Part shown: one piece after another, positions 19,245 through 42,997 of the stretch | Layout of the letters: every line of letters begins with the position of its first letter | Numbering within the stretch: position 1 is the first letter of the stretch | Assembly (NCBI RefSeq): GCF_902459465.1 | Contig: NW_022985705.1 | Coordinates: forward strand, 124,001 to 188,000 | DNA: 64,000 nucleotides | Direction: 5' to 3' | DNA from: Asterias rubens | Taxonomy: Eukaryota | The notes under the pieces: generated by a model | The model's input: only the letters and a program-made list of their open reading frames with translations | What the model was told of the DNA's origin: nothing | Databases searched by the model: none | Program-made: the position numbers and the translations under genes

Positions 19245-22200
19245 TTAAATGAGCAGTTCTCCTCTGTAGTCTAGTTTCTGGTTTGTAATATTCTGACCGA
19301 GGAACACACTGATTGCCGACAGAATAATCGTAAAGTTATGTCCTTTGCTTTCTTCGTGTATCTCTGCCGAGAAGGCCAAAAGGCGATCCCAAAAAGCCTC
19401 ATGGCGACAGCTCCTCTGACGCGAGAGGGCGTAGTTAAACTGAACCCACACGTCGTCGATGTTGATGCCGCCGACTGCAAGTAACGGTAGAATGAGCACC
19501 AAGAATTTCTCATTAAAGATAACGATGTTGATTAATAAATTTTCATTGGCGAGATACATCTTTGTCCCGCTGTAGACTTCGTAGTTCCATGTGATATGGA
19601 CGGTGATTCCTAGCACGGCTGAGGCCATGATGAACGGCATCAGGAATGTTAGCACACGCCTAAGCAGGCAAAACTCGTGGTTTATCTCTGCTATGCGACG
19701 CCTACACAGGGCAAGGTTTCCTTCGTAGCGTTTGATGAACACCAGGACAAGGTTAAACTCTGCTGTTAAAGCCATGCGCATGACCAGGACATAGTACCAG
19801 AAGCATGCGAAGAGTGGAAGCCCAACAACCGACGTGCCAATGATCACCACAAGCTTAAAGAGTGTGAAAGCTAACTCTCGTCTGGCCGTTGTTGGAGTGT
19901 AACTCTGTTTGTTATCCATCGCGGCACTGAGAATTTGAATACCGTTCAGAACATGCAGAGCATTAATTGCCAGAATCCAGACGGTGGTAAAGAATAGGAA
20001 CAGCACACCAGGTAAACGGAACTGTGTACCAGTTAAACTCAACAGACGCCTAGCAATGTAGTCTTGATGAAGCACTTGCCACCAAGAGCTGTTTTTCTTC
20101 CCTGAGGCCCGGTGGATATACCGCATGGTGTTTGACACAGTGCAGATCAGAGCAACCTCGAGTAGTATGGCTTCATATGATAAGACAGACAGGAGATGTG
20201 TGATGTAGCGGAATATACCCCAGAACTTGATCATATACCAGAACAGTGCGACTATGGTACACACAAGGAACATCAAGATGGGAAGGTTGGCCAGAATGCC
20301 ACACGGGGCACTGTTCAGTCGTTCTGGAACTGAAAACAAAACATTGGTTTTACACCAAAAATGTGCACCAATAAAAAAACCACACTGCTGGCACTAGTGG
20401 AAATGCGTCATTTTCGGGTATGACTAGAACCATGTATTTAAAACCACCTGGATACAAACCACACCCTTCTTATTTGTCCACCCGATATATAAAGATTCGG
20501 GTCTCGACTTTATATCAATTTTTTAAAGCTACTTCCCCATTATTTGTTATCACAAAAAGTTAAAGTCCCAAGTATCGTGGCCCTTCAGAGGGCTTGTAAA
20601 CGCTAACGTCATGGGTAATAATAGTTTTCTCCGAAGTGCAAGGCCATGTGGAGTAGTAGATTGGACCATTCTATTTTGAGGAGGGGGGGGGGGCATAAAC
20701 ATGACTCTATAGCGGCAATGATATAGCACGCTTACCAGCTTTAGTGAAATCGTTTATCGCTGCCCCGTTGGCGTTCCATAGGACACTCCTGCACACGGCA
20801 CAGTTGCCGTCTTCTTTTGATTCTCCATCAGTGACGTCATCTCTCTCGGTGTCCGGTTTTTTCCCTTCACCAGTTTCCATGTCAGTAGTAGCAGTGTCGA
20901 CTGCCATGTGGAAACCTGTAATGAAATTATCAAACAAATTTGGAAGGCTATAGATAATCCCCCTACTCGTACCTAAGAGCTGAATTGCGAAGGGTACGCG
21001 GCTACAACGTGTCCGAGAAGCAGGTTTGCAAGGGTGCCTTCGTAGGCAGCCAGCCACATCAACCCATTATGACCACGGAGCACAGCCACATCGAAATGAA
21101 TGACCCGATGGTCTGGAAACCCTCGTTGCACAGCAGAGAGTCAACGCACGGTAGCACTGACCGGGTATCGAACCAGCGTCACATTGGTTGAGAGGCGAAC
21201 GCTTTACGCTCATGCCAATAAACACTGCCCCAGTAAAGGCAATTTTGGATTAGAGATTCAGCGTAGAGAGTGATGCAATGCGTTATGACCTTCAGCCAAA
21301 CTTCTCAAATCCAGACTTCCTAGCTGTAAAAAAGTCCTCATTGTGAATTTTTGTTATAGTAATGTTGTTAACTTTTAGCACTTTACCACCCACAGGCGCC
21401 CGTACCGCCCGCAACCGCCCTCGAAGTTTGACAAGTTGTATTACTTAACATAAGACTAAAACACAGCAAACAGTCTAAGAGCGTGATCTCAAGATGGCAG
21501 CAGTCTAAAATAGTACAAGGTCCCAGTAAGAAAAACAAAACCAATGACAAACTTGAGGCGTGTACATTGGAGCCAAAACGAACAACATAATATTAACTTC
21601 ATGGTTTTTTTTTTACAATCGAGGTTTAGAAAATGAAATTCTTCAAAAACACAAACTCAAAGTAAGCTCACGGCAAACGGCTGGTCAGTATTAACATGGT
21701 AATACAATTCAACTGAAATATTGTAAAAATGTTTAGTCTTGCATATTAAAATGAAAATAGAATGACTGAAACAAAACTTAATGAGAAGAAGGACATCGCG
21801 TGTGTACGACATCGAACTTATAATGCATGTGTGTATACAAAAAAAAAACAATGTTTGAGCTCCCTTTTCAATGGTTTGAGTGGTTTAGGGAAACGCGTGA
21901 TTTTAATGCGTGTTTTACGTATGACTGAATTATTTTATTTGTGCTGAAATTGCCCGGGAAAACCTACACTATGAAGCCACCGTGGTCAAGTGTTCAGATT
22001 AAAGGATGTGCAATAACGGTGTTGGGTTCGAATCCTACCAAACTAACCACTGATTTCACCACCCACCTCACAATGACTATAGAATTACGTCGTCGTCTAG
22101 TTTACTGATTGACAGTGTCTTGATTATTGCAACTCATCGTAGGAACGTTAAACCAATGTTGTTTTGTATGAAAAAGAATGGATGTTGCCAGCTTGGTTTT

Positions 22201-22672
22201 ACTATCCCCTGTGGGAGTTTGCCGAGTTCCCTGGAAGGGAAGATACTTTTTCCGTACACCAAAATTGGCAACTGTCGTATTCCTTTTTATTTGGAATTTC
22301 TAAACGATTAAAAAAGGGAACCATTAAACAAAAATCAGGATTTTCTTTTTGCATGATAATTCTCTACAGAAACAAATATTTGACTACGGGAAGATGGGCT
22401 AACAAGTAAACACATACGCCAACAAACAAACGAACGAACAAACGAACGAACGAACAAACACCCCAACAAACAAATAAACCAAATGCATTTTTATTTTTCA
22501 ACTTACTCATAACGTCATCACCCGGAGGTTTCCTACGACAAAGAATACATGGTCTGGTCACTTGAAGTGGCCGGCCTTGAAACACACCGAGTAGGGTCAA
22601 AGTTGCAACCAAAAACTTCGGCCATGGAGGACTTGCTGTACTAGTGTTTGACTTTTTAACCACATCATCCAT
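19245..22672 (-). CDS. Uncharacterised 7-TM protein, paralog 1 (GRL/7TMIC-like, inferred), ~476 aa
   Basis: Exons 22672-22507, 20915-20736, 20329-19245 with two phase-1 GT-AG introns (1431 nt). N-terminus MDDVVKK...PPWPKFLVATLTLLGVFQGRP...CILC...CAVC..LWN, then seven hydrophobic segments. Strongly similar to paralog 2. Gene model is solid; the family call is inference. Confidence 0.85.
21110..21230 (-). repeat. tRNA-derived SINE head fragment
   Basis: Minus strand reads TTGGCATGAGCGTAAAGCG...GCTGGTTCGATACCCGGTC (A-box-like and B-box-like). No full cloverleaf. Confidence 0.45.
21975..22065 (+). repeat. tRNA-derived SINE head fragment
   Basis: GCCACCGTGGTCAAGTG...GGGTTCGAATCCTACC (degenerate A box, B box). 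Confidence 0.45.
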
Positions 22673-23356
22673 GGTTGGAAAGGGAAGTAGAGAGAATTGC
22701 AAAGAATTAAGATCTGAACTACACTTTTACTGAGTAGAGTTTCATAATAAATGTATGACAACAAAGATACATTCCTTCGGCTTTATACCAGTTACTTTAC
22801 CTTGATATCTATGGAACGCCAAAGAGGCATACATTCCGATCAAAATATAATGACTAAGGAACGCCAAAGGGCATACATTTTAATCATCACATCGATCGGT
22901 GTGTTGATCGGATAATTGTATACCTCTTTTGCATTTCATAGATATTGTTACAGATGGGCTTTCTCTCCCCCTTATCCTGTTCCTTTTGTTATGACATATT
23001 TGTTTGTCTTTAAGAACATCTGTGGTATTTGGCAAAACAGGTCAGTCTGTTTCACAATGTGTATTGTTAGATGTTATGCAACGGTCATAATGTAACATTG
23101 TGTCCTTAATGTGTTGACACTCCAAACTTATTATTAAGGTGCAGTGGACACAATGTTTAGTATAATTGCCCACTGCATTGTGTGATGTTTCTAGCCTATA
23201 AAATACTGGGTATGCCTCTTGCTGGGTTACACTCATCACTCCGCCACCACCGAGTCAGCCAGGGGCTCTGCCCAACTCATACATTGATGGGTGTCACCAC
23301 TTCAACCATCGGCCACACCATTGTCCAGTATTGGTGTTTCAGCCATATTCCAGTTA

Positions 23357-23619
23357 CAGAGACAGTCAGTCACAACTGTGCTCTTTCTCCTTCAAGTTGA
23401 TGGCTTGAACCAACCGGTTCTTGCACAGAGACAGTCAGCCAAAACTGTGCTCTTTCTCCTTCAAGTTGATGGCTTGAACCACCCGGTTCTTGCGCTCCGA
23501 TGGCCTAAAACCCACGCCCGGTTTTGAGGCTCTTCCTAGATGGCCTAAAACCCACGCCCGGTTTTGAGGCTCTTCCTAGATGGCCTAAACCCATGCCAGG
23601 TTTGAGGCTCTCCCTAGAT
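23357..23619. repeat. Compound tandem repeat: 2 x 69 bp followed by about 3 x 40 bp
   Basis: 69-bp units start at 23357 and 23426. 40-bp units GATGGCCTAAAACCCACGCCCGGTTTTGAGGCTCTTCCTA start at 23499, 23539 and 23579 (third copy degenerate). Confidence 0.9.
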
Positions 23620-24826
23620 GTACCAATCTAGTGCCAGACGTCAATTTAGAAGAGGCACCGTGTAACCAGCACATCGAACCCAGTCATCAAACTTCCGGTA
23701 GCTATAATCTTAGGGTCTCTCATTTGAATTGTATTAAATCTGCCATGTGCATTATTAATGGTTCTATTGCTTTAAATATTGTTGTTTGAGTAAAATAAAT
23801 TATCATCGTGAATATAATCGCTGGTTTAGGTTTCACTCTTCCTTGTCAAATGTCTCTGTCGTGCCTTAGTTCCTTTTTGACATTGTAATGAATTAGGCGC
23901 ACGTAACAATATCAAGTATTAAAAACAGGAACTATACTGTGTTGATATACATTGCAATATTTGTATTGTAGATTATTTTAAGACAAAAACTGATGAAACC
24001 AAAACCTGCAAGGAAGTAAATAACCTCGATTCTTCCGGATCTTGTATAAACACATCGAGAGAAAACCACTGAAAAATATAGAGGATAGAAGGATTCGGTT
24101 TCAAGAAAATACATACACTTTTAGTTTCTTTTGATGAGGAAGTTTGTTGAGAAAACCCCAGAAAAATGTTTCGGTATTTGTTAGCATAATATGTTTCGTA
24201 TAAAGATTGTCAAAGACCATGTATACCATACCATACCAGCACTTGATTAAAACCAACATATAACTTGGTTTTATAGCAAACCCATGAAAGTTTAAGCTCA
24301 AAAGGCCCTCTTAGTTTTCAACGTTCTAAGAAATCGTGTTTTTGGAACTGCCAGTTCAATTTTGTTTAACCCATTTCTCGACACATCATAAGTGAAAAAG
24401 GATATTTGTACTTGTGGCCATTATATTTTCCACGTCACCACCAAGGGAGTGCTCATCTTTATCGTTGTTGTTTTCCCAAAGGCACACAAAATCCGTCAAT
24501 AAATTAATGAAAATTTAAATTGCAACTCTGTGTTTTATAAAATACAAAACCAATGTATTGTGTATGTACCGGTAAGTTACATGAACAGTTCTAATGCGCA
24601 CTGGTAAAATTCAAGGTTATTGAAGCAAGCAATGTGTTTGTTTTACAGTGTTGATTTTGAGTCAAGTATTTTGATCCGGTGAACGTATTTCTCGTTCAAG
24701 TCGGTTTTCTTATTTGAATCTGCAAATGTTATAAAGATAATACCTGGGAACTGTCGTCTTCATCAAAGCGAGTCTGTAGCCATACGTTAAATGCTGAACT
24801 CTTACACAGTTGCGCGTCATTGACGG

Positions 24827-25210
24827 TGTCGCATGCAGTTATGTCATCTATGCAATATTATGCGGAGGACATTATTGCATATGCAATAATGTCCGTTGGA
24901 CGGTTTTGCATATGCAATCGTGTCCGCCCGGGCGCAGCTGCATATTGTGTCAAAACCGTCCTTGCTGTAAACTAAACGCCCTTGGTCGACGGAACACGTT
25001 CGCAATTTTTTTACAAGCTAAGTGCATGTTCGGCCGTTGGGTAGTCGCTGCAATCATAAATACGTGAATAATCATGCTGCATATACGTAGGTTCCGTGCA
25101 TGCACGCTCGCACATACATGTACAGTCGTGTACATGTCCCGGACACGATTGCATATGCAAAAGTGTCCGGAGCGGACAGTATTGCATGGTGGACACAATT
25201 GCATCTGACA
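24827..25210. mobile_element. Non-autonomous element with TGT...ACA ends and 4-bp TSD (Ginger-like)
   Basis: TIRs TGTCGCATGCAGTTATGTC and GACACAATTGCATCTGACA; direct ACGG on both sides (24823-24826, 25211-25214); internal GGACACGATTGCATATGCAA sub-repeats. Confidence 0.7.
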
Positions 25211-25311
25211 ACGGCTCTTGGCCGTAACCGAATTGGCGTCTTCAGCTACGGCTATAGGGTGGTTGGGTGTTGCTAAGGATTTCACGATGACGCGGAAATA
25301 AACCTGTCGCC

Positions 25312-25700
25312 TTAAAGAAACACGTTGCCTTGGATCGGATGAGTTGATCTTTGAAAAGCGTTTGTAACCGTTTGTTATAAAATGCATATGGTTGGAAAGA
25401 TTTTGTAAAAGTAAAATACAATGATCTACACAAGTTTGCCTCGAAATTTTGTGGTTTTCCTTTTACTGTGCGAACTAACACGGTCGGCCATTTATGAGAG
25501 TCAAAAAATTGACTCCCATAAAGGCCGACCGTGTTAGTCGACGAGGTAAAAGGAAAACCGTGCAATTTCGAGGCATATTTGTGTGGATCATTGTATTCAA
25601 CTTTTACAAAATCTTTCTACCCGTATGCATTTGATAAAAAACGGTTACAAACGCTTTTCAATGACCAACTCGACCGATCCAAGGCAACGTGTTCCTTTAA
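25312..25700. mobile_element. Kolobok/T2-type foldback MITE family A
   Basis: TTAA|AGAAACACGTTGCC ... GGCAACGTGTTCCT|TTAA. Confidence 0.88.
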
Positions 25701-25834
25701 CTGTAGCTGCCAATTTTGACACAGCTTAACCTTGATCTGTGGTCATAGCGCGCCGGGTGTGTAGTAACTGGGTGAGAGTTCATGTTTCCATGTTACATCC
25801 TCAAGCAGACTATGATCATGACGACAGTGCCCCT

Positions 25835-26217
25835 TTAAAGGCAGTGGACACTATTGGTAATTGCTCAAAATAATTATTAGCATAACACCTTACTTGGTAA
25901 CGAGTTATGAGGAGAGGTTTGTAGTATAAAACATTGTGAGAAACGGCTCCCACTGAAGTGACGTAGTTTTCGAGAAAGAAGTAATGTTCCACGAATTTGA
26001 TTTAGAATTTTAGGTCGAAATCAACCATCTGAAAGCACACAACTTCGTGTTAGCATGGTTCCGACAAGGGTGTCTTTTCTTTCATTAATATCTGGCAACT
26101 TCGGCAACCAATTGAGTTCAAATTTTCACAGGTTTGTTTTTTATGCATATGTCGAGACACACCAACTGTGAAGACTAGTCTTTGACAATTACCGATAAAA
26201 GTGTCCAGTGTCTTTAA
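25835..26217. mobile_element. Kolobok/T2-type MITE family B
   Basis: TTAA|AGGCAGTGGACACTATTGGTAA ... GTGTCCAGTGTCT|TTAA. Confidence 0.88.
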
Positions 26218-26727
26218 AGGTTTAGGACAGCTGAAATAGTCGCAAAAATACGTTATGTCTTTGTAATTTTATTTTATTGATTCATTTTAATTTCACACTT
26301 CAAACATTACAATTAAAACAATCACAGACAATCCAGAGAAGGGCAAACGTATTGTTAAATGGTTTTGCCCATCTCTTAAAAAAAACTGTCATAAAAAATA
26401 TGTGCCCCCCGACCTAGCTCATTAAAAGGTAAAAATAATGTATATATTATAATTATACTATACATTACACACTCTAAAATTGTGGTGAAAAATTAAAACA
26501 AAAGATGGCAAGCAAAAGCAATACACACACGATAATATAAAAGAACCACCGTATAAAAACTACCAAATTAAAACTACGGCCGAGAGTTATTGTTATCAAT
26601 CATAAGCAATACATGACCTTTATGTGGGAAATAGGGACAACCCCATTGTGACTACACTATTCTGCATGTACGCGCATTATCCTTTATTTTGGTTGTAGTA
26701 ACAACCGAAATCAGCTTTTGCGCGTTT

Positions 26728-27155
26728 GTAAAGGATTTAGGTACTTTTTCAAAATGTCCACAGATTTACATTAATTTTACAGGGTTTGAAGATAATGATA
26801 GTGGAAAGCTTACCTTCAAATATTACTTGCTAAGGTTGTTTAGTTTTTGAGAAATGAGTAAAACAAGTCACAAAATAATTTTGGTCTCACGAGACCAAAA
26901 TTATTTTAGCATGTAAAATCACCTTAACCAGTTATGATATTATACCAAAACCATAGCATAACTGGTTAATACGTTTTTACATGCTAAAACTGAGATGAAA
27001 ATTATTACTTTTACTCATTTCTCAAAAACTTCAGCACCTTAGTAAGTAAAATTTCAAGGGAAGCTTTCTACTATCATAATCTTCAAACTGTGTAAGTTTA
27101 ATGTAAATCTGTGGACATTTTGTTTTTTGTTAGGACAAAGTACATACCCCTTTAA
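26728..27155. mobile_element. Kolobok/T2-type foldback MITE family D
   Basis: GTAA|AGGATTTAGGTACTTT ... AAAGTACATACCCCT|TTAA; long inverted arms (CCACAGATTTACATTAA / TTTAATGTAAATCTGTGG, TTTTGAGAAATGAGTAAAA / TTTTACTCATTTCTCAAAA). Confidence 0.75.
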
Positions 27156-27944
27156 AGGTTTTCATTCACAGTTTTCTCGAATTATTAGGCCCCCCCTATG
27201 ACTTTTTTCCACATAAAACTAATAATAGATCACAGAAAAAAAATATATACTATAGTACGAACTTCCTCACGAGGTGGCTTTCAGACTTTAGCTAAATTAA
27301 ACATTAATGTTTTGTATATTAATAGTTACTCCTGTATTTTAAAACTTTAACTGCATCTTTTTTCCTAAGTTTAAAATTTTAAGCTTAAAATTACTATTAT
27401 CATAGTCCAAAACTTGCTATAAAAACAGGATTTTAGAGGTAAACACATTTTTGGGGGGTATAATCTAGTTTCTCCAAATAACAAAAACATGCTTTTTGTG
27501 AGCAATATAATGCACACCAATTATTGAGTGGTTATGAAACACTTTAAAAGAATCATAATTTTTTTTTTGAGGAACAATAATGTTAAAAATATATCCTCAT
27601 CTATTTTTAGCTTGTTTAAGGAACTAGGGAACTTAACAAAAAATCCCGTCTTTTCTTTCAGTTTTGATGAACAAGGGCAGTGACCTACCTAGGGGGGGGG
27701 GGGATACGAGCGCCCCGTTGATAATTTTTAAGATTGGAAGTATCCAGAGTTATGGTATGTTTCGATGAAAGGTAGTCTTATCTCAATTTGGGATGAGTTA
27801 CTCGTCCTTAAGACTTGTCTTAAGTTTTCCCATGACGAGATCTAGGACTAGTGCTAAGTTTGAACTTGTAAAATAACGACCCATTGCCTTTAAGACGAAT
27901 CGTAGCTCTTTGTGAACAAGTGATCTTACTCTGCTCTTTACACA

Positions 27945-30683
27945 CTACAAGAGCCCATGGTTAGTCGTGTAATCAAGTCGCTGATCTGCCAAATTGTGAC
28001 CAAGATATAAACTGATCAGTGAGAGAAACAACATCAAGTTATGGCCGGCTTTACGTTCATCTTGTAGCTCGGCAGTAAACCCCAAAAGCCGCTCCCAAAA
28101 CTCCTCATGAAGACTGTTTCTCTGCCGCATGAGGGCGTAATTAAACTGCTGCCAGATGAAATCAATGTTGATCCCACCCACTGCTAGTAAAGGTAAGATG
28201 AGAATAAAACATTTCGAAGTGAAGATGAAGATGTTGATTAGAAGGTTTCGCATCGCGATGCCTTTGTCTTTCTCGCTGTAGATTTGGTAGTTCCACGTGA
28301 TGTGGACTGTGAGACCCAGAACGGAAGAAGCGACAATGAACGGCATCAGAGTCGCCAACAACACGTGCAGAATACGGAAATCATGATTGACCTCAAATAC
28401 ACGGCGACGACACAAGTCTAAGTTCCCCGTATTGCGCTTGATGAAAACTATCACCAGATTTAACTCGGTTGCCAAAGCTGTGCGCATGACAAGTATGTTA
28501 TACCAGAAAAGTGTGTAGATGGCGAGACCGATGATTGACACGAATATCACCATGGTCGTGTTCAAAATCGTAAACGCCTTAGTGGGTGGAGACTTCTCAA
28601 TTAATGAAATACCCATGGGCATGCAGGAGTCGTTGGTTAATAACGTCGCATTGACTCGACTTAGAGAGTTAACCAAAAGTACAACCTGCATGGTATTCAC
28701 TACAAGTAGCCAGACTAAACTGAAGATCAAAAACACCTTCTTGGGTAAGAGGAACCTGCGACCGGCCAGGCATCTCAAACGCCTCAGTATGTAGTCCTGA
28801 TGAAGCACATCGTACCACGACCAATCACGCACTGGTTCCCGACGACGGTACTGGACCGCGTTGGACAATGTACAAACTAAAGCCACCCCGACTATGATGT
28901 CACCAAATGCAAAGAAAGACACTAAATGGTTGATATTGCTGATTTGACCCCAATACGTAACTACATACCAACCTAGTGTGAATGTGGAGCAACCGAGGAA
29001 TGTTAAAATTAGTAGATTAGAAAGGACACCACACACTCTGCTGTTAAGCCAACCTGGAACTGAACAGATACAAAGGAAACCATTGTTTAAACAAACATGT
29101 GGCACAAACAATAAAGATGGAGGCAATCCCACTGCTGCCACTGTCAATAGTGATGTAATATGTTATTATAGTAAAGTTATTATTTTGTAAATAACCTACA
29201 CCGTTTTGTATATATTTTAATGTGGCCCAAATAAACAACCATATAATTATGAGTACTGATCCCTCTTCTGCCACTACACAGGTTGTATAGTAAACTTGAG
29301 TGAGATCCCTGCTTATACGGCAAGTGCGTATTGAATGGCTTCTTATTGGCACACTGTAACAAATATAATAAAAATTAGAGGTAGCTAGGGCTCCGGCACA
29401 TTAATCCGAAGGGTCGCATGTGCAAGTATCGTTTATGTATGCCTAATTGTGTTCACTGCGCAACCCTAAATTTACCCACGGTCAGTTTGTCTTATACAAA
29501 AAGTAGTACAGAAAAAAAACGAGAAAAAAAACATATCGTGCAGATTTATGGTTTTGTTTCTTTAGCACTATACAGTTCTGCAAATACGAACCTGCTTTTG
29601 AGCAATCCCTGACTATTTCCCCATCGGCGTTCCATAGGAGACTGGAGCATACAGTACAGCCTGGTCGACTACTACCATCAGCCTCATGATTATTCTCAAC
29701 GTTGCGATTTTCACCACTGCTGGATTCTGCATCGCAGTCTGTATCAACTTTTGTAAAGGGGAACAAAACAAGTTTGTCAAAATCTTTTAATAAAATACAT
29801 AGAACTGTACATGTGATGGTTGGCGTTTTCTTACAAGTCTTTGATCAAGACGCTGCTTTTGTTTATTATCTAGAAAGCTGTACTCATCCTGGAATTTCGA
29901 AACAGAAGGGTCTTCAACCAAAACTACTTTCATATACCATGCAGGAAGCAATATTGATGCCAACCTTGATATACATGTAAATGAAGCAATTTTCTCAAAA
30001 CAAACTGCAACTTTGATCACAGGTTTCTCGGTCAATTGCTACACCCGGATCATTTGATTTCGTTTGAAAATGAATGTTTCGTTGAACCAGCATTCAATAG
30101 TCAAAAGGAGTGAATCAATTTCACTAAGTCAGCATTCAGTGGTAAAGATCACTTCAATTATTCTAGAGGTCGCAAAGACCATTCGATTTTTTGCAAAAGC
30201 CAATTGCGAGAGGATGGTCAATATCTTTGCAGTATTTGCGATAAATTTGCAGCTTAAGTGCAAATGCAAAGACATCACAAATAATAAGTCGCAATCGATT
30301 TGTAAAGATATTTGCAAAACTCCAAATATTTTTCGCAAACTGTTTGCAAAGATAGTGTTTGCGATGCATGGTATCTGTTCGGTGACACTATATCGCTGTG
30401 AAATACCAACTATAATGGGAGTCGACATATTTCGGTGGAGGGGAAATATCTAAACAACAGGTAACTTTGAAATGGCATTCACGAGTGAGTTAGTGGGCCT
30501 ACCCTTACTTGATTTACCACCATCTCCTCGTTTGTGGCGGCAATCATAACACGGTCTGCAAGCGTCTAATGGACGACCCTTAAAGACTCCCAACAATGTC
30601 AAAACAGCCAAGAGAAACTTGGGCCACGTTGGGATGACAGCATTATGTTCGGCTGGCTCTTGGTCCATGTTAGTGTTGCTCAT
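27945..30683 (-). CDS. Uncharacterised 7-TM protein, paralog 2 (GRL/7TMIC-like, inferred), ~481 aa
   Basis: Exons 30683-30509 (phase-1 donors at 30503 or 30518 are also possible), 29747-29592, 29059-27945. Intron positions and phases match paralog 1. Shared motifs WPKFL..LTLLGVF.GRP, C..C, C..C..LLWN, VLHQDYI.RRL, TVHITWNY and LILPLLAVGGINID. Confidence 0.85.
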
Positions 30684-30890
30684 CCTGTATTTTTATTGAC
30701 ATGATAAAAACTGTATTACACACTAAAATCGACGAAATAACAAAATTACTTTATGAAAATATTATTTCAAATCACATAGTGCTTCCGGTTTACGGGGCAC
30801 CACCATTTTCTTTTTTTTTTTCCTTTGAAAGGGACGTAAAGCCGTAGGTCTTGTGTGTTGCGTATGAACGAACGTAAGAGTACACTTATT

Positions 30891-31766: not shown

Positions 31767-34309
31767 AAAATGGAAACATGATATCATACTTGCCTTTGTT
31801 GGTAGTCCGTTGCTTTGTAAGGTGCTGCACACATATTCATTAATAAGTTATGTTTAGTGTGGCTCATAACCTTTAATGTATGAACTTGCGTAGGCCTATC
31901 AGTTACACAATCTTACCTCTGCATTGTCGATAAGATAAACTGCGTCTAAATGCTCCGTTGGCTTTATTCTCTTTCCTGACTTCCTGCTTGTATTGTGTTA
32001 CGATCCAGCAAAAAAGTACAACAAATTTCCAGCACATGATCGCAATTTAATTCTGGTTGCATTTCACATATTCGTGCCAAGTTTCTATTTCGGTAAACGG
32101 TGTTTAGACAGCACGTGCTTATGTAGGATTTTCTTTTTTTACTTCCTCTTTTGTAAAAAAATATATACATGTATATATACATATGTTAATTTAACATTTT
32201 TTTATCTTAAAGTGAAGATAAACGTTGAATCCATCCACGTTTCGCGAAGTGACAGCGGGTACCAGCCGCATCTCTGGCCGCAGCATTCTTAAACGGACAC
32301 CACGCAAATTCTTGATGTCCAGCCATTCCTCAGAAATAATAGAAACGATTCATGAATCAATCGTGTATCAATTCCAAATGTTTTTGGGGGTGAAGAAACA
32401 TCCGAATTATTCTACTTTGAATGGAATCCCTTCTCAAAATATTGTTTATGCCTGTATCACCAGTTACAGTGCTTCATTAATTCGTTAGTTTTGGAGTAAA
32501 TTACCAATCTGTGACACTTCCTTTAACGGTACGGAAAAGATTCCCAAGGGAGCCACAGGGTTGAAACTGAGATGTTATAACTAAAGGTCATAATAATAGC
32601 AATGGTTGTGGAACTGGCTTAGACTCCAATACCTCTGACGCACACGTAAATTCAAGAACTTTGCCTGTGGAATCGGGTAAAAAAGATCAACATAAACAAA
32701 GTTAAATATCAACACTGAAGCGGTTCCCGCCTTTTAATAACTATACATTCAATATATTTTGCTTCAAGTTGTTCACTCGGACCTCGGTGCTTGTCGAAAC
32801 TACAGATCCTACAAGTTTATAAAACTGATTGTGGATCTAGCCTTCATCATGGGAGAGGGCATCATAACTGAATGTGAAAGTCCACCATGGCCAAGATGGG
32901 TTCTCGTTGCACTGACTCTATTGGGAGTGTTTAAGGGTACACTGTAAAAAATAGTTAGTCAATCTTGCTTATAAATTGGTCAAAATGACTAAGTTTGCCT
33001 AGTCCTGTGTCTCTGACTAATGTAATGTTAGCCTGACTAATCTTATATTTGCTGTGACTAATCACTATAAGTCAGAACTTTAACCCGTGACTAGAATTTT
33101 GTTTGGACTAAAACGATTTAGTCAAAATGTCGGGTTTTGACTAATTTTGACTGGTATGAAGCTACGGTGCTTTGACTAAGTAAGATTGGTCATGTTCCCG
33201 CCTTCCCAACATTTTAGATGTGGGAAAAATATAAATTGCCCGCGAATTAGCAGGATGCTGGTACCCGGCGGCAACGTCAATGTATAGTTAGTGTGTAACT
33301 TGGGTTTTTAGCTTGTACCCGTTAACTTGCAAACTGCAGCTAGCATGCAGGGCGTACATGATACTCTCCCGTTCGGCGTGTGTGATACATACACTTCACA
33401 GGGCAAGGAGGCTCAATCCAGGCTCCGACCAGTTTCAGAAATAAGGTGAGAATATTGGTTTTCCCGTTACATTTTTAAAACCGTAACATACTTAGCCAGA
33501 GGGAGACCGTTACATTGACGTTAGTCTACAATCATATTGTGGAAAAGCTTTTAGTGTTTTTGGCCACAGAACTCTAGGTGCATAGGCCAGCACTTAACGG
33601 CGGCTAGGCCTTGCATTACGTGTCAAAATGGAGCATGCAGGCGAAGTTTATCAGGTAGATTCAAGTTTAAAATCTCTGATTTTCACCCTATAATTAATAT
33701 TGCCAGACTGAGAATTTAATGTAGAACACTTTATTGTAAAGTTTGTATATTTTCAAGATATAGCGACTGTAAAAGGACGAAACAAAAAAGCTTGTTTAGC
33801 ATGTTGTTGTTTTTCCAGTGGGGCTACGGGCGTGTGTATAGTGTACGTGTGTGTACACAAACGATGGGCCTAATCATTGTAGTTTGTATGCAATGCATGC
33901 CCTTGCTTTAGGCTTTACTGCACGACACATGATGTGCAAGGCCTAGTCGGTTAATGTTTAAATCAACCCATGCTATATTATAATATTATGGGGATGGTCA
34001 AAGCTTATTATTTATTGGCCATCATAAAGTGCGGTCCTAAATGTCTTCCAATCAGCAAGGACTTTACATTTAAAAATAAGTTCATATTCATAACTAACTT
34101 GAATTTGAAAACATGGGCATTAAAGTTTCCATGTAACAAACGTAGGCCTAACGACAAGTAACAAGTAATAACGGTAGCATGTTCGGAAAATCAAGTGTAC
34201 CAAGCGATGGAATGTAGTTATCGCAACTCTATAGTCCATCAGCCCCAAATTTTGGACTATCAAGTTAAGACTTATAATGTAGCAACTAACGAGGACAAGG
34301 TATAATTCT

Positions 34310-34817
34310 TTAAATGTTTACTGAAGCACAAAGTATTGATACTTTTATGTTGCACCTCATAATTTTTTTAATGATTTAGTTGTAAAAAATCATTTTATAC
34401 ATTCCATTGTACACATGATTTATTTCCTTTAAAAAATAAGGCTTCAGGAATGCCAACAAAAATAGGTCACTTGCTGACAATGGCTGGATTCTCAATGTGA
34501 CATCATCTTACATGTTTCCTGAGCTATTCCAGAAAACAATTGTTCTGAAATGGGGTCTGTCAAATGAATGACAAATATGTGTTTTTTCTTTTAACAGACT
34601 CACTCAATTCTGTTCAATGAATGTGAGGTCATGTTGAGAATCTAGCCATGTCAAAAAGTGACCTATTTAGGAGTTCATGAAGACAATTATTTTTAAAGGA
34701 AATAAATCATTTAAAATTACACAGGGATGCACAAGACTTTTTTCCAACTTAATCATTTAAAAACAATATAAGGTGCAATATCAAAGCATCATACTTTGTA
34801 TTTCAGTAAACCTTTAA
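34310..34817. mobile_element. Kolobok/T2-type foldback MITE nested in the EnSpm element
   Basis: TTAA|ATGTTTACTGAAGCACAAAGTA ... TACTTTGTATTTCAGTAAACCT|TTAA; inner inverted pairs ATGATTTATTTCCTTTAAAAA / TTTTAAAGGAAATAAATCAT and AATAGGTCACTT / AAGTGACCTATT. Confidence 0.7.
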
Positions 34818-35080
34818 ATATATGTAATAATTGCATCATGGGAAATGAGTAAAACAAATGTCTTGCCCTACACCGATTTGATAAGCACTGTATACTCAGG
34901 AGCTTTCAAGTCCTGGGGAAAAAGTTCCACAGGCAACTCAGGTGGGTTTCGAACCCACAACTTAACCACTAGACCACTGAGCAAGGCGGATCCAGTATTA
35001 TTTGCAGTGGGTACCGGGCTTGGTGGTCTAGACATCTGCTGTAGTCACGCAGGAGTCATAGGTTCGAATCCTGACAAGGG

Positions 35081-35368
35081 CCCAATTTCATAAAGCTGTT
35101 TACCGGTAAGCACATTTTTGTGCTTACTGTTGCAGAAAAATGTGCTCAAGCATACATATGTAAACGTATTTCATTCACCATGATTTCTCAAGTTAGCAGA
35201 AAATTTCGTAGCGCGCATGCACGTTCACCATGGATTTGCATTGTTACGTCACTCATGTGCTAACAGCGGGTTAGCCAGCATTTACCCTTGCTTACGATAA
35301 ACAGCTTTATGAAATAGAAATTCTGCTGAGGGAACTGCTGCTTACATCTTTTATGAAATTGGGACCAT
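35081..35368. mobile_element. Family E Harbinger-like MITE nested in the EnSpm element
   Basis: GGCCCAATTTCATAAAGCTG at the left end and TTTATGAAATTGGGACC at the right. Confidence 0.65.
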
Positions 35369-35982
35369 GTTGCCTGTGGAATTTTTTATCCGCAAGACTC
35401 GAAAGCACTGAATATATATACAGTGCTTATCACATCGGTGTAGGGCAAAACAAAATTTTAAGGCATCATCTATACTCACACCACACTGAATATTTGTTCC
35501 TTTTTAGCACAATTATAAGCCACAGACTTCACAGAACTTGGAGAGAAAATATTTTGACAACCATCTCCACTGAGTGGGGATTGTTTTATGCAAAAAATAA
35601 TAACCATCAGAACTGTGAGCTCTTTTGTTTTGTTTACAGCTTAGCTTGCTTAATTGTATGTTCTGATTGGTTGCCATTCAAGTTCTAAATATAAAACAGC
35701 ACCTGTAACTCAAATGCGGGACAATACATCTTTCAAACATTGTCTTTTTAAAATCCATCCTGTCTGCATTTAAATAGATAAGATGTTTCATTTAAGATTT
35801 TCTGTTATTTTGAATACTTTTATTTAATAGTAAAGTTGTAGGTTTTGCTATATTTCCGTTGTAGTCTGAGCAGCTTTGTCCTGTGAGAAACCCATTTCAT
35901 CATCAGCAGCATGTCTTGGAAGGCAAGGTTAGTTTCTAATTTTTGTTATTCTGTAAACCGCCAAGATTTGAATTTGGCTTAT

Positions 35983-37123
35983 GGGTCATTCCATGTCAGT
36001 TCAACAGGCTTTTGGACCTGACCTTCACGGATCGACACAAAATTTGGTGTGCTGATTTGACTTACTGAGAAACCCCCAGAACTGAATTTTTATGTCATTC
36101 AGATAATTACTTTTTGAGATACAGGTTAACAAACTTTTGACTAATTAGCTTGACCCTCTATGTTTGGACAACCATATCTCCAAAAGTAAAGCACCCACAT
36201 AACACTTTCCACTATTTTAAAGCTCTTGACGGAGAAAAAAATTCCACTTAGCATTTAACAAAATTACGCACAATTTTTTTGGGGGTGGGGGGGGGGGGCA
36301 TGTGGGGGCAAAGATTTTACTTTTGGGGCCCAAGAAGTGCAAGCCATTTAATATGTTACTTGATTTACACATTTTAAAAAAACATTTTTTATGATTTCAA
36401 TGAGGGTTGGGGGGGGGGGGGGGGGGAGGAGGAGGGGGTGGAGGCCGCCCTGCCCCCACCCCTTCTAATTATGCCACTGCACATGAGTCATGTCATGGGA
36501 CATGTTTTTAAAGTTACAGTACTAACTATTATAGGCCTACTGTATACACGTGTACATGATGTACGTGTACATGATGTACGTGTACATGATGTACATGTAC
36601 AGCTGTATACATGTATGTACACCTGCATATGTACATTCATTTAAAGTTTTTAACCTTTATAGCCTGTGTTCATATTATCATAACTCCAAAACTGTAAGAG
36701 TGCCCATCCTAAATTTTTCTGAAAATGTTGCTTATATCATGAGCTAACAATGAAAAAATTACGCATTTTGAAAAATATACATTTTCGCAATCAAGGGCAA
36801 ATGTCACATTTGTGCGTAATTTTGTTGTGCTACGTGGAATTTTTTCTCCTTATTTTATTAAATGAAGGCCATGTCAAGAGCTTTAAAATAGTGGAAAATT
36901 TATTTATGTGGGTGCTTTACTTTTGGAGATATGGTTGTCCAAACATAGAGGGTCAAGCTAATTAGTCAAAAGTTTGTTAAGCTGTATCTCAAAAAGTAAT
37001 TATCTGAATGACATAAAATGTCTGTTCTGGTGGTTTCTCAATAAGTCCATTCAGCACACCAAGTAACGTTTCAATCTGTGTTGGTCAAGTCCAAAAGCGT
37101 GTTGAATTGACACGGAATGACCT
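35983..37123. mobile_element. Long-TIR element (~250-bp arms) nested in the EnSpm element
   Basis: 35983-36230 (GGGTCATTCCATGTCAGTTCAACA...AAAGCTCTTGAC) is the reverse complement of about 36873-37123 (GTCAAGAGCTTT...TGTTGAATTGACACGGAATGACC). Superfamily not assigned. Confidence 0.75.
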
Positions 37124-37790
37124 ATTGTCATGTTTTGATAACCATCTCTAAAAATAAAACACCTAGGGGCCTACAGTGATAATTTTTACACCAGTTTAAA
37201 GCTCTTAATATGTCCCAGATTTCATAAAAACTAAATCAACATTATATTATGTACCACAAAAACATTAATTACGCAAAAAAATTACATTTGACCTTGATTA
37301 GCAAGGTCATTTTTTTTATATGTATAATTTTTATCTCAATGTTAGCTTAAGATGTACATTAGCAATATTTCTAGAAAAGGTTGGGATGGGCACGCGCACA
37401 GTTTGAATTATGATTATTTGAACAATGGCGGTTAAGGATGAAAACTTAAAAAGTATGTACATATGCGTGTGCTTATTATGTGCATGTATAATAATGTACA
37501 TGTGTAAAAATATTACCTTTGACCTTGATTAGCAAAATGCATTTTTCAAAAGGCATAATTTTTATCTCATTGTTAACAATATTTCTAGAAAAAAACTGAA
37601 CAATATGTCAAACTTAACAATATGTCAAAAAATTATGACATACAATTTTAATTATCAATTTTTTTTTCAAAGTCCTTTAAAAGCAGTCATGTGACAAGGT
37701 GATGAAGGACCAAGCCAGAGACGAGGAAGTCCTTTAACATTCTAGAATAACATTCTTTAAAATAAGTATGTTTTTCTGCATTTTTTACAG

Positions 37791-39317
37791 AAGCTATCAG
37801 TATTGCTGCCATCCTTGGCATCCCATGTACACTAAAAGAAAAAATCTGCAATATGTTGATTCTGGGTGATGAAGATGGGGTAAGTAAAGGGTTGCTCACA
37901 CTGCAGCCGTAACAAGAAACAATAACACTCAAAAGAACATGGTCTATTGGTTGAATAAGCATGCGCATATTCCACACAGTATAATTAACCAGTAGACTTA
38001 AACAATTGAGTGCATCTCTGTTTCTTGTTTTTGTGATGCATCTCTGCTTTTTAAATAAGGGAATAAAAGAGTGGTAGTGAGGTCTTAAATGACCCTTTAA
38101 GACTGGCAGGGTCATGTCCATGCAATAAAGGGCCAAGTTTGAATGGGCATGGTTTATGTCAGCATTGCGTCATTAAGGTAGGCGTGTGGCTATGAGTGCT
38201 TAACACGCGTTAGCCAACCGGTCTTAAACAAGTCCAGCTCAGACATAAAAACACCCCCATGTGACATGCTCTCCATTGGGAATAGCGAAACTGTCTGGGA
38301 TATTTATGAATGAATGATCAAATCCAAAACTCTTAATTGACTTACTCATGACTTGAATTATAACTTGTATTAATTTGTCACATGTTGGGTTGAATTAACA
38401 CTCAACTTCATGGACTTAACTTGGACTCAACTCAAACGCAAGACAAAGACTTGAACTCAAGAAAAGAAAGACATTGATAATTTTTGAATGACTGATATAC
38501 AAACTCTCAAATTCACCTTCGGTTACAATTCACTTTTGGCTGAACAAACAAAAGTGAAGAATACATTATTTGGACCTTGGACCACCATTTATCCTACACT
38601 ATGCATGAGGCAGTCTCATTTTATATACTCATAAACTGATGAGGGTTTTTGAAATTGCATCTGCAACATACCAATGGCCAATTTGTGTTGTTTTGAATTA
38701 ATAAACTCCTCAGAGAGAGTATATGCACTGTGATTGGTCGAAGAGTGGTCACGTTGGGGTGTATTAAAATGTGATGTAAAGACAAGTTCTGTGGAACAAG
38801 TGAAAATTCACAGTAAAGGTATTAATTCATGGGAACAACAGTGTGAGGACCTGGTCTTCACTGGGTAGTAATGACCATGGCCGCTGTTAATGAAAATCGC
38901 TTTTGGCTTGGTCCATTAACAACAGCCAGCCACCAACCCGGTCATTACCACACAGTGAAGACCAGGTCCTCACACTGTTATTCCCTAATTAACACACTGT
39001 TATTCCCTAATTAAAAGTATTTATTTTTTCATATACAGGGGACAGCTTGGCCTGTCATTGAGGGTAATGACAACAGACTTGAGGACTGCACTTCATTTGA
39101 CGTGATCATTGATGGGTTGGCTGTCAGCAGCTCCACTTGTCTCCTGACATCGGTGAAAGTGTATTTAGCCAGCTTTTATGTTTTCAATTTGGCTTATCCC
39201 ACATGCCTCAGGAAAACTTTGTCTTTTTTCCAGAAAATTGTCCTGAACATCCAAGACAATATTCCTCTCGACCGCAGTGTTATATCTTGCCTGGACAAAC
39301 TGAATAGGTACATTTGA
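37791..39317 (+). CDS. Last two exons of the transposon's accessory ORF (resembles the C-terminus of SAMD3-like/EnSpm second-ORF proteins)
   Basis: Exon 37791-37879 (AISIAAILGIPCTLKEKICNMLILGDEDG) splices in phase 0 to 39039-39317 (GTAWPVIEG...FDVIIDG...YLASFYVFNLAYPTCLRKTLSFFQKIVLNI...DKLNRYI*). The FYVFNLxYP...FFQK motif is recalled from such proteins, not searched. Confidence 0.55.
38822..39013. repeat. Hairpin element with a duplicated right end
   Basis: AACAGTGTGAGGACCTGGTCTTCACTG / CAGTGAAGACCAGGTCCTCACACTGTT inverted arms. ACACTGTTATTCCCTAATTAA is repeated twice at the right end. Confidence 0.7.
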
Positions 39318-39338
39318 CTGTGACCATTTTTCTTGGTT

Positions 39339-39715
39339 AAAGCAATGTGTTACTAACATAAACCAAGTAACTGCATTTGACTCAGTAGTTCCTCTTGATC
39401 AAAGCATTGTGTCTTACTAGATAAACAAGTTACATGTACATATACTGCATTTGACTCAGTATGTTCCCCTCGATCAGATCATTGTGTGTTTATACTAAAG
39501 TAAACCAAGTTAAGCTGCATTTGACTCATCAGTATTTTTCCTCTTGATAAACGCATTATGTCTTACTATGAACAAGTTTTACTGCATTTGACTTAGTATG
39601 TTCCTCTCAAAGTATTGTGTCTTACTAAAATAAACCAAGTTAAACTGCATTTCACTTAATTAGCATGTTCCTCTTGATCAAAGCATTATGTCTTGTTAAG
39701 ATAAACTGAATATTC
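39339..39715. repeat. Minisatellite, about 6 degenerate 60-75 bp units
   Basis: Recurrent AAAGCATTGTGTCTTACT...AACCAAGTT..ACTGCATTTGACTCAGTATGTTCCTCTTGATC. Confidence 0.85.
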
Positions 39716-42497: not shown

Positions 42498-42997
42498 NNN
42501 NNNNNNNNNNNNNNNNNNNNNNNNNNNNNNNNNNNNNNNNNNNNNNNNNNNNNNNNNNNNNNNNNNNNNNNNNNNNNNNNNNNNNNNNNNNNNNNNNNNN
42601 NNNNNNNNNNNNNNNNNNNNNNNNNNNNNNNNNNNNNNNNNNNNNNNNNNNNNNNNNNNNNNNNNNNNNNNNNNNNNNNNNNNNNNNNNNNNNNNNNNNN
42701 NNNNNNNNNNNNNNNNNNNNNNNNNNNNNNNNNNNNNNNNNNNNNNNNNNNNNNNNNNNNNNNNNNNNNNNNNNNNNNNNNNNNNNNNNNNNNNNNNNNN
42801 NNNNNNNNNNNNNNNNNNNNNNNNNNNNNNNNNNNNNNNNNNNNNNNNNNNNNNNNNNNNNNNNNNNNNNNNNNNNNNNNNNNNNNNNNNNNNNNNNNNN
42901 NNNNNNNNNNNNNNNNNNNNNNNNNNNNNNNNNNNNNNNNNNNNNNNNNNNNNNNNNNNNNNNNNNNNNNNNNNNNNNNNNNNNNNNNNNNNNNNNN
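42498..42997. other. Assembly gap (500 N)
   Basis: Run of exactly 500 N. Confidence 1.

What the first reader, a model, noticed from the sequence alone, without database searches (positions are those of the whole stretch)
19245..30683. Tandem family of unnamed 7-TM proteins with inferred insect OR/GR-type (N-in) topology: candidate new chemosensory ion channels
Seen: two intact ~480-aa paralogs with identical exon structure and seven hydrophobic segments. The loops after TM2 (YRRREPVR..RRLRCLAGRRFLLPKK) and TM4 (IKR...CRRR) are strongly basic. Paralog 2 has N-glycosylation sequons (NAT, NDS) in the TM3-TM4 loop. By the positive-inside rule this gives N-in/C-out topology, the reverse of a GPCR. 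Established: OR/GR/GRL (7TMIC) channels have this topology, an N-terminal re-entrant S0 helix ending in a hhG-P-like motif, long helical TM4-TM5 and TM6-TM7 loops, and a split TM7. Here the equivalents are LTLLGVF.GRP, xEINHEFxLLRRVL and FWDRLLAF. Inference: these are divergent 7TMICs. The TYhhhhhQF TM7 signature is replaced by S(V/L)(F/Y)LG(Q/H)N, so the pore may differ. Local expansion to three copies is typical of chemoreceptor families.
Basis: partly seen in the sequence, partly recalled or inferred. Interest (0 to 1): 0.8.

Follow-up and report, generated by a model that had tools for sequence, protein, structure and literature searches.

The report
Sea-star relatives of insect taste-receptor channels
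Two neighbouring sea-star genes encode membrane proteins that fold like insect smell and taste receptor channels although sequence searches do not recognise them, and they define an unnamed family found across echinoderms and acorn worms; whether they sense chemicals is untested.

Summary
Two intact three-exon genes lie on the minus strand: A (19245-22672, 476 aa) and B (27945-30683, 481 aa). They are 50% identical, with phase-1 introns at the same positions.

The proteins are not canonical animal GRLs:
- No Pfam hit in 53 members.
- No TYhhhhhQF motif.
- No 3' introns; S1-S7 is a single exon.

The family has 98 representatives at E<=1e-3. All 30 looked up are echinoderms or hemichordates, and NCBI calls them "uncharacterized".

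It is probably a cytoplasmic zinc site.

dN/dS of 0.09-0.24 indicates purifying selection.

The third copy is only an exon 1, split by an 8.5-kb insertion, and the locus then runs into the assembly gap.

Channel activity and a chemosensory role remain inferences. GRLs are already known in these phyla, and a few sea-cucumber members are auto-named "Gustatory receptor", so novelty is moderate.

The parts
22507..22672 (-). Paralog A exon 1: start codon, S0 helix (WPKFLVATLTLLGVF) and first CxxC (CILC). Ends in a phase-1 GTAAGT donor.
   Evidence: conserved N-terminal block in the family alignment
20736..20915 (-). Paralog A exon 2: acidic, probably disordered linker and second CxxC (CAVCRSVLWNANG). 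Phase-1 on both sides.
19245..20329 (-). Paralog A exon 3: all seven transmembrane helices S1-S7b and the stop codon, with no intron.
30509..30683 (-). Paralog B exon 1: start codon, S0 helix (WPKFLLAVLTLLGVF) and first CxxC (CRPCYDC).
   Evidence: junction matches NCBI model P0006
29592..29747 (-). Paralog B exon 2: acidic linker and second CxxC (CTVCSSLLWNADG).
27945..29059 (-). Paralog B exon 3: S1-S7b and the stop codon. NAT/NDS sequons lie in the S3-S4 (EL2) loop.
32849..32940 (+). Paralog C exon 1, 5' part (MGEGIITECESPPWPRWVLVALTLLGVFKG), head-to-head with B.
   Evidence: 88% nucleotide identity to the A. amurensis copy-C locus
32941..41408 (.). 8468-bp insertion that splits exon 1 of paralog C. 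It begins CACTG... and is absent from the A. amurensis orthologue.
41409..41491 (+). Paralog C exon 1, 3' part (..IQANRRCLLCRQKREGIECIFE), carrying the first CxxC and a phase-1 GTAAGA donor.
42498..42997 (.). Assembly gap (N run). The orthologous alignment of copy C to A. amurensis ends here. Exons 2-3 of copy C are not seen after it. Not filled.

Best explanation
Genes A and B are tandem paralogs of an unnamed family found across Ambulacraria (echinoderms plus hemichordates). [quoted passage not shown]

Predicted architecture of each ~480-aa protein:
- A cytoplasmic N-terminus.
- A short re-entrant S0 helix (WPxxhxxxLxhLG).
- Seven membrane helices. S4, S5 and S6 extend far into the cytoplasm and, together with S7a, form an 'anchor' bundle.
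- A short S7b that ends outside the cell.

By analogy with the solved insect receptors, four subunits would assemble around a central pore lined by S7b. A ligand pocket would sit in the outer half of S2-S4 and S6 of each subunit. This assembly and function are inferred, not shown. The part that differs most between A and B is S3, EL2, outer S4 and EL3.

Three traits set the family apart from canonical animal GR/GRLs:
- There is no TYhhhhhQF motif. The window proteins have (F/Y)LG(Q/H)N(I/L)..Q, and many relatives have ..Q-F..Q.
- The whole S1-S7 core is one exon, so the 3' introns typical of GRL genes are absent.
- An ~85-residue cytoplasmic insert lies between S0 and S1. It carries two CxxC motifs separated by an acidic disordered linker, which I infer to be a C4/C3H zinc-binding module.

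My odds:
- 7TMIC fold and homology: about 0.9.
- Forms a ligand-gated cation channel: about 0.5.
- The ligand is an external chemical cue, that is, a chemoreceptor: about 0.3.
For: Fold:
- The AF2 model of P0006 (96% identical to B) has pLDDT 84.8 and pTM 0.87. The model of window A exon 3 has pLDDT 91.3 and pTM 0.89.
- Both were made without templates, from alignments holding only family members.
- In Foldseek against the PDB, the top 22 chains are all insect GR/OR at probability about 1.0, then probability drops to 0.2.
- All top 30 hits in AFDB Swiss-Prot are OR, GR, GUR-3 or EGL-47.

Sequence features: language-model neighbours at 0.95-0.96 are 7tm_7, DUF267, Trehalose_recp, DUF3537 and 7tm_6 clusters, for both P0006 and window A.

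Topology:
- IL1 holds 6-9 K/R, against 0-3 in the outer loops.
- 49 of 50 members have more K/R in the predicted inner loops.

Real, constrained genes:
- dN/dS is 0.09 (A) and 0.24 (B) against A. amurensis, and 0.14 for A at dS 0.72.
- The three-exon structure is conserved in Acanthaster and in a hemichordate.

Family range: 98 representatives at E<=1e-3. All 30 looked up are ambulacrarian, covering five echinoderm classes and two enteropneusts.

Cys module: 23 members have CCCC, 4 have CHCC, and about 10 have neither pair.

A-B divergence: 11-30% identity in S3, EL2, outer S4 and EL3, against 69-80% in inner S4, outer S5 and S6.
Against: - There is no sequence-level link to OR/GR. Pfam gives nothing for A, B or any of 53 members, even at E<=10.
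- A family profile finds no OR/GR chain among PDB sequences.
- TM-scores to solved structures are only 0.4-0.57, and Foldseek E-values are about 1e-3.
- The pore-gate Q-F of GRs is not conserved in the window proteins.
- I have no tetramer model, no expression data and no functional data.
- The models are predictions.
- Non-insect GRLs with known roles are often not chemosensory (development, light, egg-laying; PMC7746228).
Confidence: 0.75

Rival explanations
1. The proteins have the 7TMIC fold, but their role is not external chemoreception. They could act in development, reproduction, internal signalling or intracellular membranes, possibly not as ligand-gated channels at all.
For: - Known non-insect relatives have roles in body patterning, light or H2O2 sensing and egg-laying. 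Sea-urchin GRLs are expressed in early development (PMC7746228).
- GrlHz and PHTF are broadly expressed and their function is unknown (PMC9998090).
- The gene family is small here: 3 at this locus and at least one more (P0008) on the same A. amurensis contig. This is unlike the very large receptor repertoires typical of chemoreceptor families (general knowledge; not measured here).
- The GR gate residues are not conserved.
- The conserved cytoplasmic Cys module suggests intracellular regulation or partner binding.
Against: - Tandem duplication with the fastest divergence in the outer S3-EL2-S4 region is the pattern expected of ligand-binding diversification.
- Sea cucumber and Ptychodera carry runs of near-consecutive accessions or locus tags on single contigs.
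Confidence: 0.45
2. The resemblance is convergent or a modelling artefact. These would then be an unrelated seven-helix membrane protein family, such as a transporter or scaffold, that AlphaFold packs into an OR-like bundle.
For: - No profile-sequence similarity to any OR/GR.
- TM-scores are near 0.5.
- Helical bundles can reach middling Z by chance, according to the tool notes.
- The ESM-Atlas shape search returned only TM<0.3 hits.
Against: - Two different proteins at 50% identity give the same answer.
- An independent language-model method points to the same Pfam families.
- The alignments used for modelling held no OR/GR.
- From memory, Orco and all later OR/GR structures post-date AlphaFold2's training cut-off.
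Confidence: 0.07
3. They are divergent G-protein-coupled receptors with N-out topology.
For: Seven hydrophobic segments. Starfish chemoreception has so far been attributed to GPCRs (PMC6267866).
Against: - No GPCR appears in the top 50 of the wide scan.
- There is no 7tm_1, 7tm_2 or 7tm_3 Pfam hit.
- K/R bias places IL1 inside, with the N-terminus inside.
Confidence: 0.02

Closest known systems
Insect gustatory receptors (BmGr9, DmGr43a, DmGr64a; Pfam 7tm_7)
- Same length class and the same predicted N-in/C-out topology.
- Long cytoplasmic S4-S6 plus S7a anchor, and a short S7b. The architecture is as described in PMC12635824.
   Different: - About 10% identity and no 7tm_7 hit.
- TYhhhhhQF is absent. 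The gate Q-F is replaced by N-L or N-I in the window proteins.
- An 85-residue insert with 2xCxxC lies between S0 and S1.
- There are no 3' introns.
Insect odorant receptors (MhOR5, ApOR5, AgOR28, Orco; Pfam 7tm_6)
   Different: - No sequence similarity.
- ORs are an insect-specific offshoot of GRs (PMC7746228), so the likeness reflects the shared superfamily fold, not orthology.
Canonical deuterostome GRLs (SpurGRL1 of sea urchin, SkowGRL1 of acorn worm; Robertson 2015, Saina 2015)
   Same: Same phyla, same superfamily and similar length. They have an S0-like hhGh motif.
   Different: - The canonical GRLs keep the TM7 motif (T-Y/F...Q) and the characteristic 3' introns (PMC7746228).
- Their S0-S1 linker is short, as seen in the supplement text.
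- The present family has none of these features. I compared the two by reading only; no alignment was run.
Drosophila Grl proteins (cryptic 7TMICs found by structural screening; PMC9998090)
   Different: - The Drosophila Grls are fly-restricted and probably derived from fly Grs.
- This family is ancient, being shared by echinoderms and hemichordates.
- It also has its own conserved gene structure and Cys module.
PHTF, GrlHz and plant DUF3537 (other 7TMIC branches)
   Same: They share the superfamily fold. DUF3537 clusters appear among the language-model neighbours (0.92-0.93).
   Different: - PHTF has a long IL1 between TM2 and TM3; here IL1 is 35 residues.
- GrlHz has BLAST-detectable homologues across Holozoa and sometimes an N-terminal WD40 domain. 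Homologues here are ambulacrarian only, and the N-terminal extra is a Cys module.
- DUF3537 proteins have long IL3.

Membership tests
7TMIC superfamily (structure-defined: OR/GR/GRL/Grl/DUF3537/PHTF/GrlHz) | About 350-500 residues, seven TM helices, an N-terminal re-entrant helix, and TM7 split into 7a and 7b | tested here: met
   476 and 481 aa. DSSP of the models shows S0 at H38-46, seven long helices, and S7a H444-461 with S7b H465-480.
7TMIC superfamily (structure-defined: OR/GR/GRL/Grl/DUF3537/PHTF/GrlHz) | Intracellular N-terminus and extracellular C-terminus, with intracellular loops longer than extracellular ones | tested here: met
   This is a prediction only. IL1 is 35 aa with 6-9 K/R, against EL1 of 3 aa and EL2 of 12-18 aa. 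K/R density is 0.171 inside and 0.101 outside, and 49 of 50 members are biased the same way. No experimental topology exists.
7TMIC superfamily (structure-defined: OR/GR/GRL/Grl/DUF3537/PHTF/GrlHz) | Homo- or hetero-tetramer with a central pore lined by S7b; ligand-gated cation conductance | not testable with these tools
   Only monomer prediction is offered, and no electrophysiology is possible.
Animal GR/GRL family in the sequence sense (Robertson 2015; Pfam 7tm_7 PF08395) | TM7 signature TYhhhhhQF | tested here: not met
   A has SAISVFLGQNITNQ and B has SLISLYLGHNLADQ. The family consensus is T..FS...G.(Y/F).G...x.Q. Some relatives keep a Q-F pair, but the window genes do not.
Animal GR/GRL family in the sequence sense (Robertson 2015; Pfam 7tm_7 PF08395) | [quoted passage not shown] | tested here: not met
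   S1-S7 is one uninterrupted exon in A and B, in Acanthaster P0013 and in the hemichordate P0042.
Animal GR/GRL family in the sequence sense (Robertson 2015; Pfam 7tm_7 PF08395) | Match to the Pfam 7tm_7, Trehalose_recp or 7tm_6 models | tested here: not met
   No such hit for A, B or any of 53 members at E<=0.1, nor for 10 members at E<=10.
PHTF-like Class-B 7TMIC | [quoted passage not shown] | tested here: not met
   IL1 is 35 residues.
GrlHz (GrlHolozoa) | BLAST-level homologues across Holozoa, including insects and lancelets | tested here: inconclusive
   An exhaustive phmmer search gave 98 hits. All 30 sampled are ambulacrarian. No direct comparison with a GrlHz sequence was possible.
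Rhodopsin-like or other GPCRs | GPCR 7TM fold, N-out topology, Pfam 7tm_1/2/3 | tested here: not met
Zinc-binding C4/C3H module (for the S0-S1 insert) | Four conserved Cys/His ligands in two CxxC knuckles, co-occurring, in a reducing compartment | tested here: inconclusive
   The pattern is CCCC in 23 members, CHCC in 4, and both pairs missing in about 10. Both knuckles are modelled with pLDDT 85-92. A cytoplasmic location is inferred from the topology. I had no coordinates to check geometry, there is no zinc-finger Pfam hit, and no metal analysis exists.

The most novel reading that the evidence does not exclude
This is a deuterostome (ambulacrarian) branch of ionotropic OR/GR-type receptors that sequence-based surveys have not recognised. 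It would actually serve as chemosensory ligand-gated channels in sea stars, sea urchins and acorn worms. Its gating or assembly would be controlled by a family-specific cytoplasmic zinc module between S0 and S1. If so, insect-style ionotropic chemoreception would also operate in deuterostomes, and would offer receptor targets for behaviour control of pest sea stars.
Probability: 0.2. Interest if true: 0.75.

Novelty: new variant of a known kind. Interest (0 to 1): 0.5.

Why it matters
The insect OR/GR superfamily is known to be ancient, but its deuterostome representation has rested on a few sequence-recognisable GRLs plus PHTF and GrlHz.

This locus adds a second family, invisible to sequence searches, that is conserved across all five echinoderm classes and in enteropneusts. 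The family has its own gene structure and an added Cys4 module. NCBI annotates its members as 'uncharacterized'.

It gives concrete candidates for testing several questions:
- Do echinoderms use ionotropic 7TM receptors alongside their GPCR repertoires?
- How far can the S7b pore motif drift?
- What does a cytoplasmic metal-binding insert do to a 7TMIC?

The advance is incremental rather than conceptual. Structural screens have already shown that cryptic 7TMICs are widespread.

Tried and rejected
- Pfam on all exons, on 53 family members, and on 10 members at E<=10: no informative hit.
- Family profile against PDB sequences: only noise such as claudin and MCT8, E>0.1.
- Word-indexed profile search with A1: returned only sea-star proteins and did not reach further.
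- ESM-Atlas shape search: TM<0.3 throughout, uninformative.
- Profile-profile comparison with canonical GR/GRL: not run. No canonical sequence was available as a tool reference, and I did not paste the ones printed in the paper supplement.
- Search for exons 2-3 of copy C using A, B, other family proteins and the A. amurensis copy-C exons: nothing beyond chance downstream of 41491. The weak collinear-looking hits at about 44.8-45.4 kb found no support when the A. amurensis copy-C exons and locus were searched against the window.
- Expression evidence: the only non-genome source of A (ENA ERZ1764473) is a metagenome contig carrying unspliced genomic sequence.
- Saina 2015 and Robertson 2015 are not held in the library. 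What they say is cited through PMC7746228.
- Supplement of the Himmel 2023 preprint: the accession lists are not held, so I could not check whether family members were already in their 7TMIC catalogue.
- Residue-level equivalence of the conserved C-terminal Gln (Q485 in P0006, Q466 in A) with the GR motif Gln: only alignment end-points were available, so this is unresolved.
- Other long ORFs in the window: no Pfam domains of note.


Full report
**What is there**

The window is animal DNA of about 39% GC. Its closest relatives in the databases are sea stars of the genus Asterias.

Two genes lie on the minus strand between 19245 and 30683, each with three exons.
- A: 22672-22507, 20915-20736 and 20329-19245, giving 476 aa.
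- B: 30683-30509, 29747-29592 and 29059-27945, giving 481 aa.

Both introns are GT-AG and phase 1, at homologous positions. A and B are 50.1% identical. B is 96% identical to an NCBI model from Asterias amurensis (P0006), which uses the same junctions.

**The third copy**

Copy C is head-to-head with B on the plus strand. Only its exon 1 is visible, at 32849-32940 and 41409-41491, and it is split by an 8468-bp insertion.

The A. amurensis locus (L004) has three intact genes of 472, 496 and 477 aa in the same order and orientation. It lacks the insertion. Its nucleotide alignment to the window runs up to the N gap at 42498 and does not resume after it. I found no exon 2 or 3 of copy C in the window.

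**Are the genes real and constrained?**

For exon 3, dN/dS against A. amurensis is 0.09 for A (dS 0.12) and 0.24 for B (dS 0.05). For A against a more distant asteroid contig (L005) it is 0.14 at dS 0.72. This indicates purifying selection.

A maximum-likelihood tree puts A and B in different well-supported sub-clades of a 100/100 asteroid clade. The duplication is therefore older than the genus.

**Family and range**

- Pfam finds nothing in A or B.
- An exhaustive phmmer search of 1.84 billion representatives with B exon 3 gave 98 proteins at E<=1e-3, 52 of them at E<=1e-10. Most aligned over the S4-S7 half.
- I looked up 30 of these, spread from the best to the weakest. All are ambulacrarian: asteroids, echinoids, ophiuroids, holothuroids, a crinoid, and the enteropneusts Ptychodera and Glandiceps. 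Nearly all are named 'uncharacterized'.
- One sea-cucumber member (A0A2G8K354) is auto-named 'Gustatory receptor' in UniProt. Two further sea-cucumber proteins with that name (A0A2G8KNA0, A0A2G8KDM1) are among the closest AlphaFold DB structural matches.
- Runs of near-consecutive accessions or locus tags on single contigs in sea cucumber and Ptychodera suggest clustered copies there too. I did not check distances or adjacency.

**Fold**

I modelled P0006 (full length, 53-sequence alignment A1) and window A exon 3 (58-sequence alignment A2). Neither run used templates, and neither alignment held any OR/GR sequence. Confidence is high: pLDDT 84.8 with pTM 0.87, and pLDDT 91.3 with pTM 0.89.

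- In Foldseek against the PDB, the top 22 chains for P0006 are all insect GR or OR structures at probability about 1.0, after which probability collapses. Window A gives the same picture.
- All 30 best hits in AFDB Swiss-Prot are OR, GR, GUR-3 or EGL-47.
- Independently, protein-language-model features place both P0006 and window A next to 7tm_7, DUF267 (nematode SRR), Trehalose_recp, DUF3537 and 7tm_6 clusters at 0.95-0.96. The literature counts all of these families as 7TMICs (PMC9998090).

I conclude that the proteins have the 7TMIC fold.

**Anatomy (P0006 numbering, from the model)**

- S0: 38-46
- Cys-rich insert: 47-132
- S1: 133-161
- S2: 165-197
- IL1: 198-232
- S3: 233-267
- EL2: 268-285
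- S4: 286-334
- S5: 339-387
- S6: 398-419, with a cytoplasmic extension at 425-437
- S7a: 444-461
- S7b: 465-480

The 49-residue S4 and S5 helices, the S6 extension and S7a correspond to the 'anchor domain' of GRs. S7b corresponds to the pore helix (architecture as reviewed in PMC12635824).

IL1 carries 6-9 K/R, against 0-3 in each outer loop. Across the family, K/R density is 0.171 in the predicted inner loops and 0.101 in the outer ones, and 49 of 50 members are biased the same way. B has NAT and NDS sequons in EL2. A has none there, but has NIT in the extracellular tail.

Family-wide conservation is concentrated in S4-S7: F310, Y312, R318, D340, C342, R343, W381-N-Y383, P415, A418, G420, G421, W428, F431, W447, S472 and Q485.

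Between A and B, identity is 11-30% in S3, EL2, outer S4 and EL3. It is 69-80% in inner S4, outer S5 and S6. This is the pattern expected if the outer pocket diversifies while the assembly core is kept.

**How it differs from canonical GR/GRLs**

[quoted passage not shown] Neither is present here.
- The S7b end reads SVFLGQNITNQ in A and SLYLGHNLADQ in B. The family consensus is (Y/F)-h-G-h-x-h-x-x-Q, and some relatives keep a Q-F pair.
- The whole S1-S7 core is a single exon in A and B, in Acanthaster, and in a hemichordate.
- No Pfam 7tm_7 or 7tm_6 match exists in any of 53 members.
- A family profile finds no OR/GR among PDB sequences.

The canonical SpurGRL1 and SkowGRL1 sequences printed in the Benton 2020 supplement look different. 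They have a short S0-S1 linker and a T-Y/F...Q end. I compared them by reading only.

The family is therefore a cryptic, structure-level relative, like the Drosophila Grls (PMC9998090). It is not a member of the sequence-defined GRL group.

An ~85-residue insert lies between S0 and S1. Its layout is R(R/K)-C-x-x-C, then an acidic low-confidence linker (pLDDT 43-50), then C-x-x-C-x-x-h-x-W-(D/N)-x-x-G. Exon 1 ends after the first knuckle, and exon 2 carries the linker and the second knuckle.

Among members with an N-terminus, 23 have all four Cys and 4 hemichordate members have C-H-C-C. About 10 lack both pairs together. Co-occurrence and Cys-to-His exchange are what metal ligands do. Both knuckles are modelled confidently (pLDDT 85-92), and the topology places them in the cytoplasm. 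I infer a C4/C3H zinc site. I had no coordinates to check the geometry, and no zinc-finger family matches.

**Mechanism**

Shown:
- The genes are intact and under purifying selection.
- The proteins have the OR/GR fold, with charge bias consistent with N-in topology.
- Conservation is concentrated in the anchor and pore half.
- Divergence between the paralogs is concentrated in the outer half.

Inferred:
- The subunits form tetramers with an S7b-lined pore.
- They are gated by a ligand bound in the outer pocket.
- The Cys module binds zinc and regulates assembly or gating.

Not addressed here: expression site and ligand.

**Novelty**

GRLs in Echinodermata and Hemichordata, and the existence of sequence-invisible 7TMICs, are already published (PMC7746228; PMC9998090; bioRxiv 10.1101/2023.08.30.555482). 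I found no paper that describes this family or any 7TMIC in sea stars. The held supplement of the 2023 screen did not let me check their accession lists.

I rate this a new variant of a known kind, of moderate interest.

Noticed in passing
window 32941-41408: An 8468-bp insertion beginning CACTG... sits inside exon 1 of paralog C. It is absent from the orthologous A. amurensis locus, so it is a lineage-specific insertion. Only short ORFs are seen inside it.
   Followed up: partly
window 25835-26218, 30890-31262, 31442-31766, 47703-48085, 49620-50017: An interspersed repeat of about 400 bp, 77-85% identical to a segment in an intron of A. amurensis copy C. Copies flank genes A and B.
   Followed up: no
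L004 12215-18581 versus window 29060-29591: Intron 2 of the B orthologue is about 6.4 kb in A. amurensis but 0.53 kb in the window, so a large insertion or deletion separates the two species.
   Followed up: no
L001 (ENA ERZ1764473, contig k141_13010416): A metagenome-assembly contig carries paralog A exon 3 at 100% protein identity, with intron sequence read through as an ORF. This is sea-star DNA in a metagenome, not a transcript.
   Followed up: partly
P0008 and P0011 (not in the window): Asterias amurensis has a fourth paralog (P0008, 480 aa, about 82% identical to B) on the same 17.7-Mb contig as the locus. Its A. rubens counterpart is annotated only as a 246-aa fragment (LOC117305859).
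   Followed up: no
L002 (Acanthaster planci DF978678.1): The Acanthaster homologue P0013 is a single copy within the 27 kb fetched. Its neighbours are MORN, Rad52/RDM1 and carbonic-anhydrase genes. Synteny with the window was not checked.
   Followed up: no
window 42498-42997: A 500-N assembly gap falls where exon 2 of copy C would be expected from the A. amurensis spacing. It was left as it is.
   Followed up: partly
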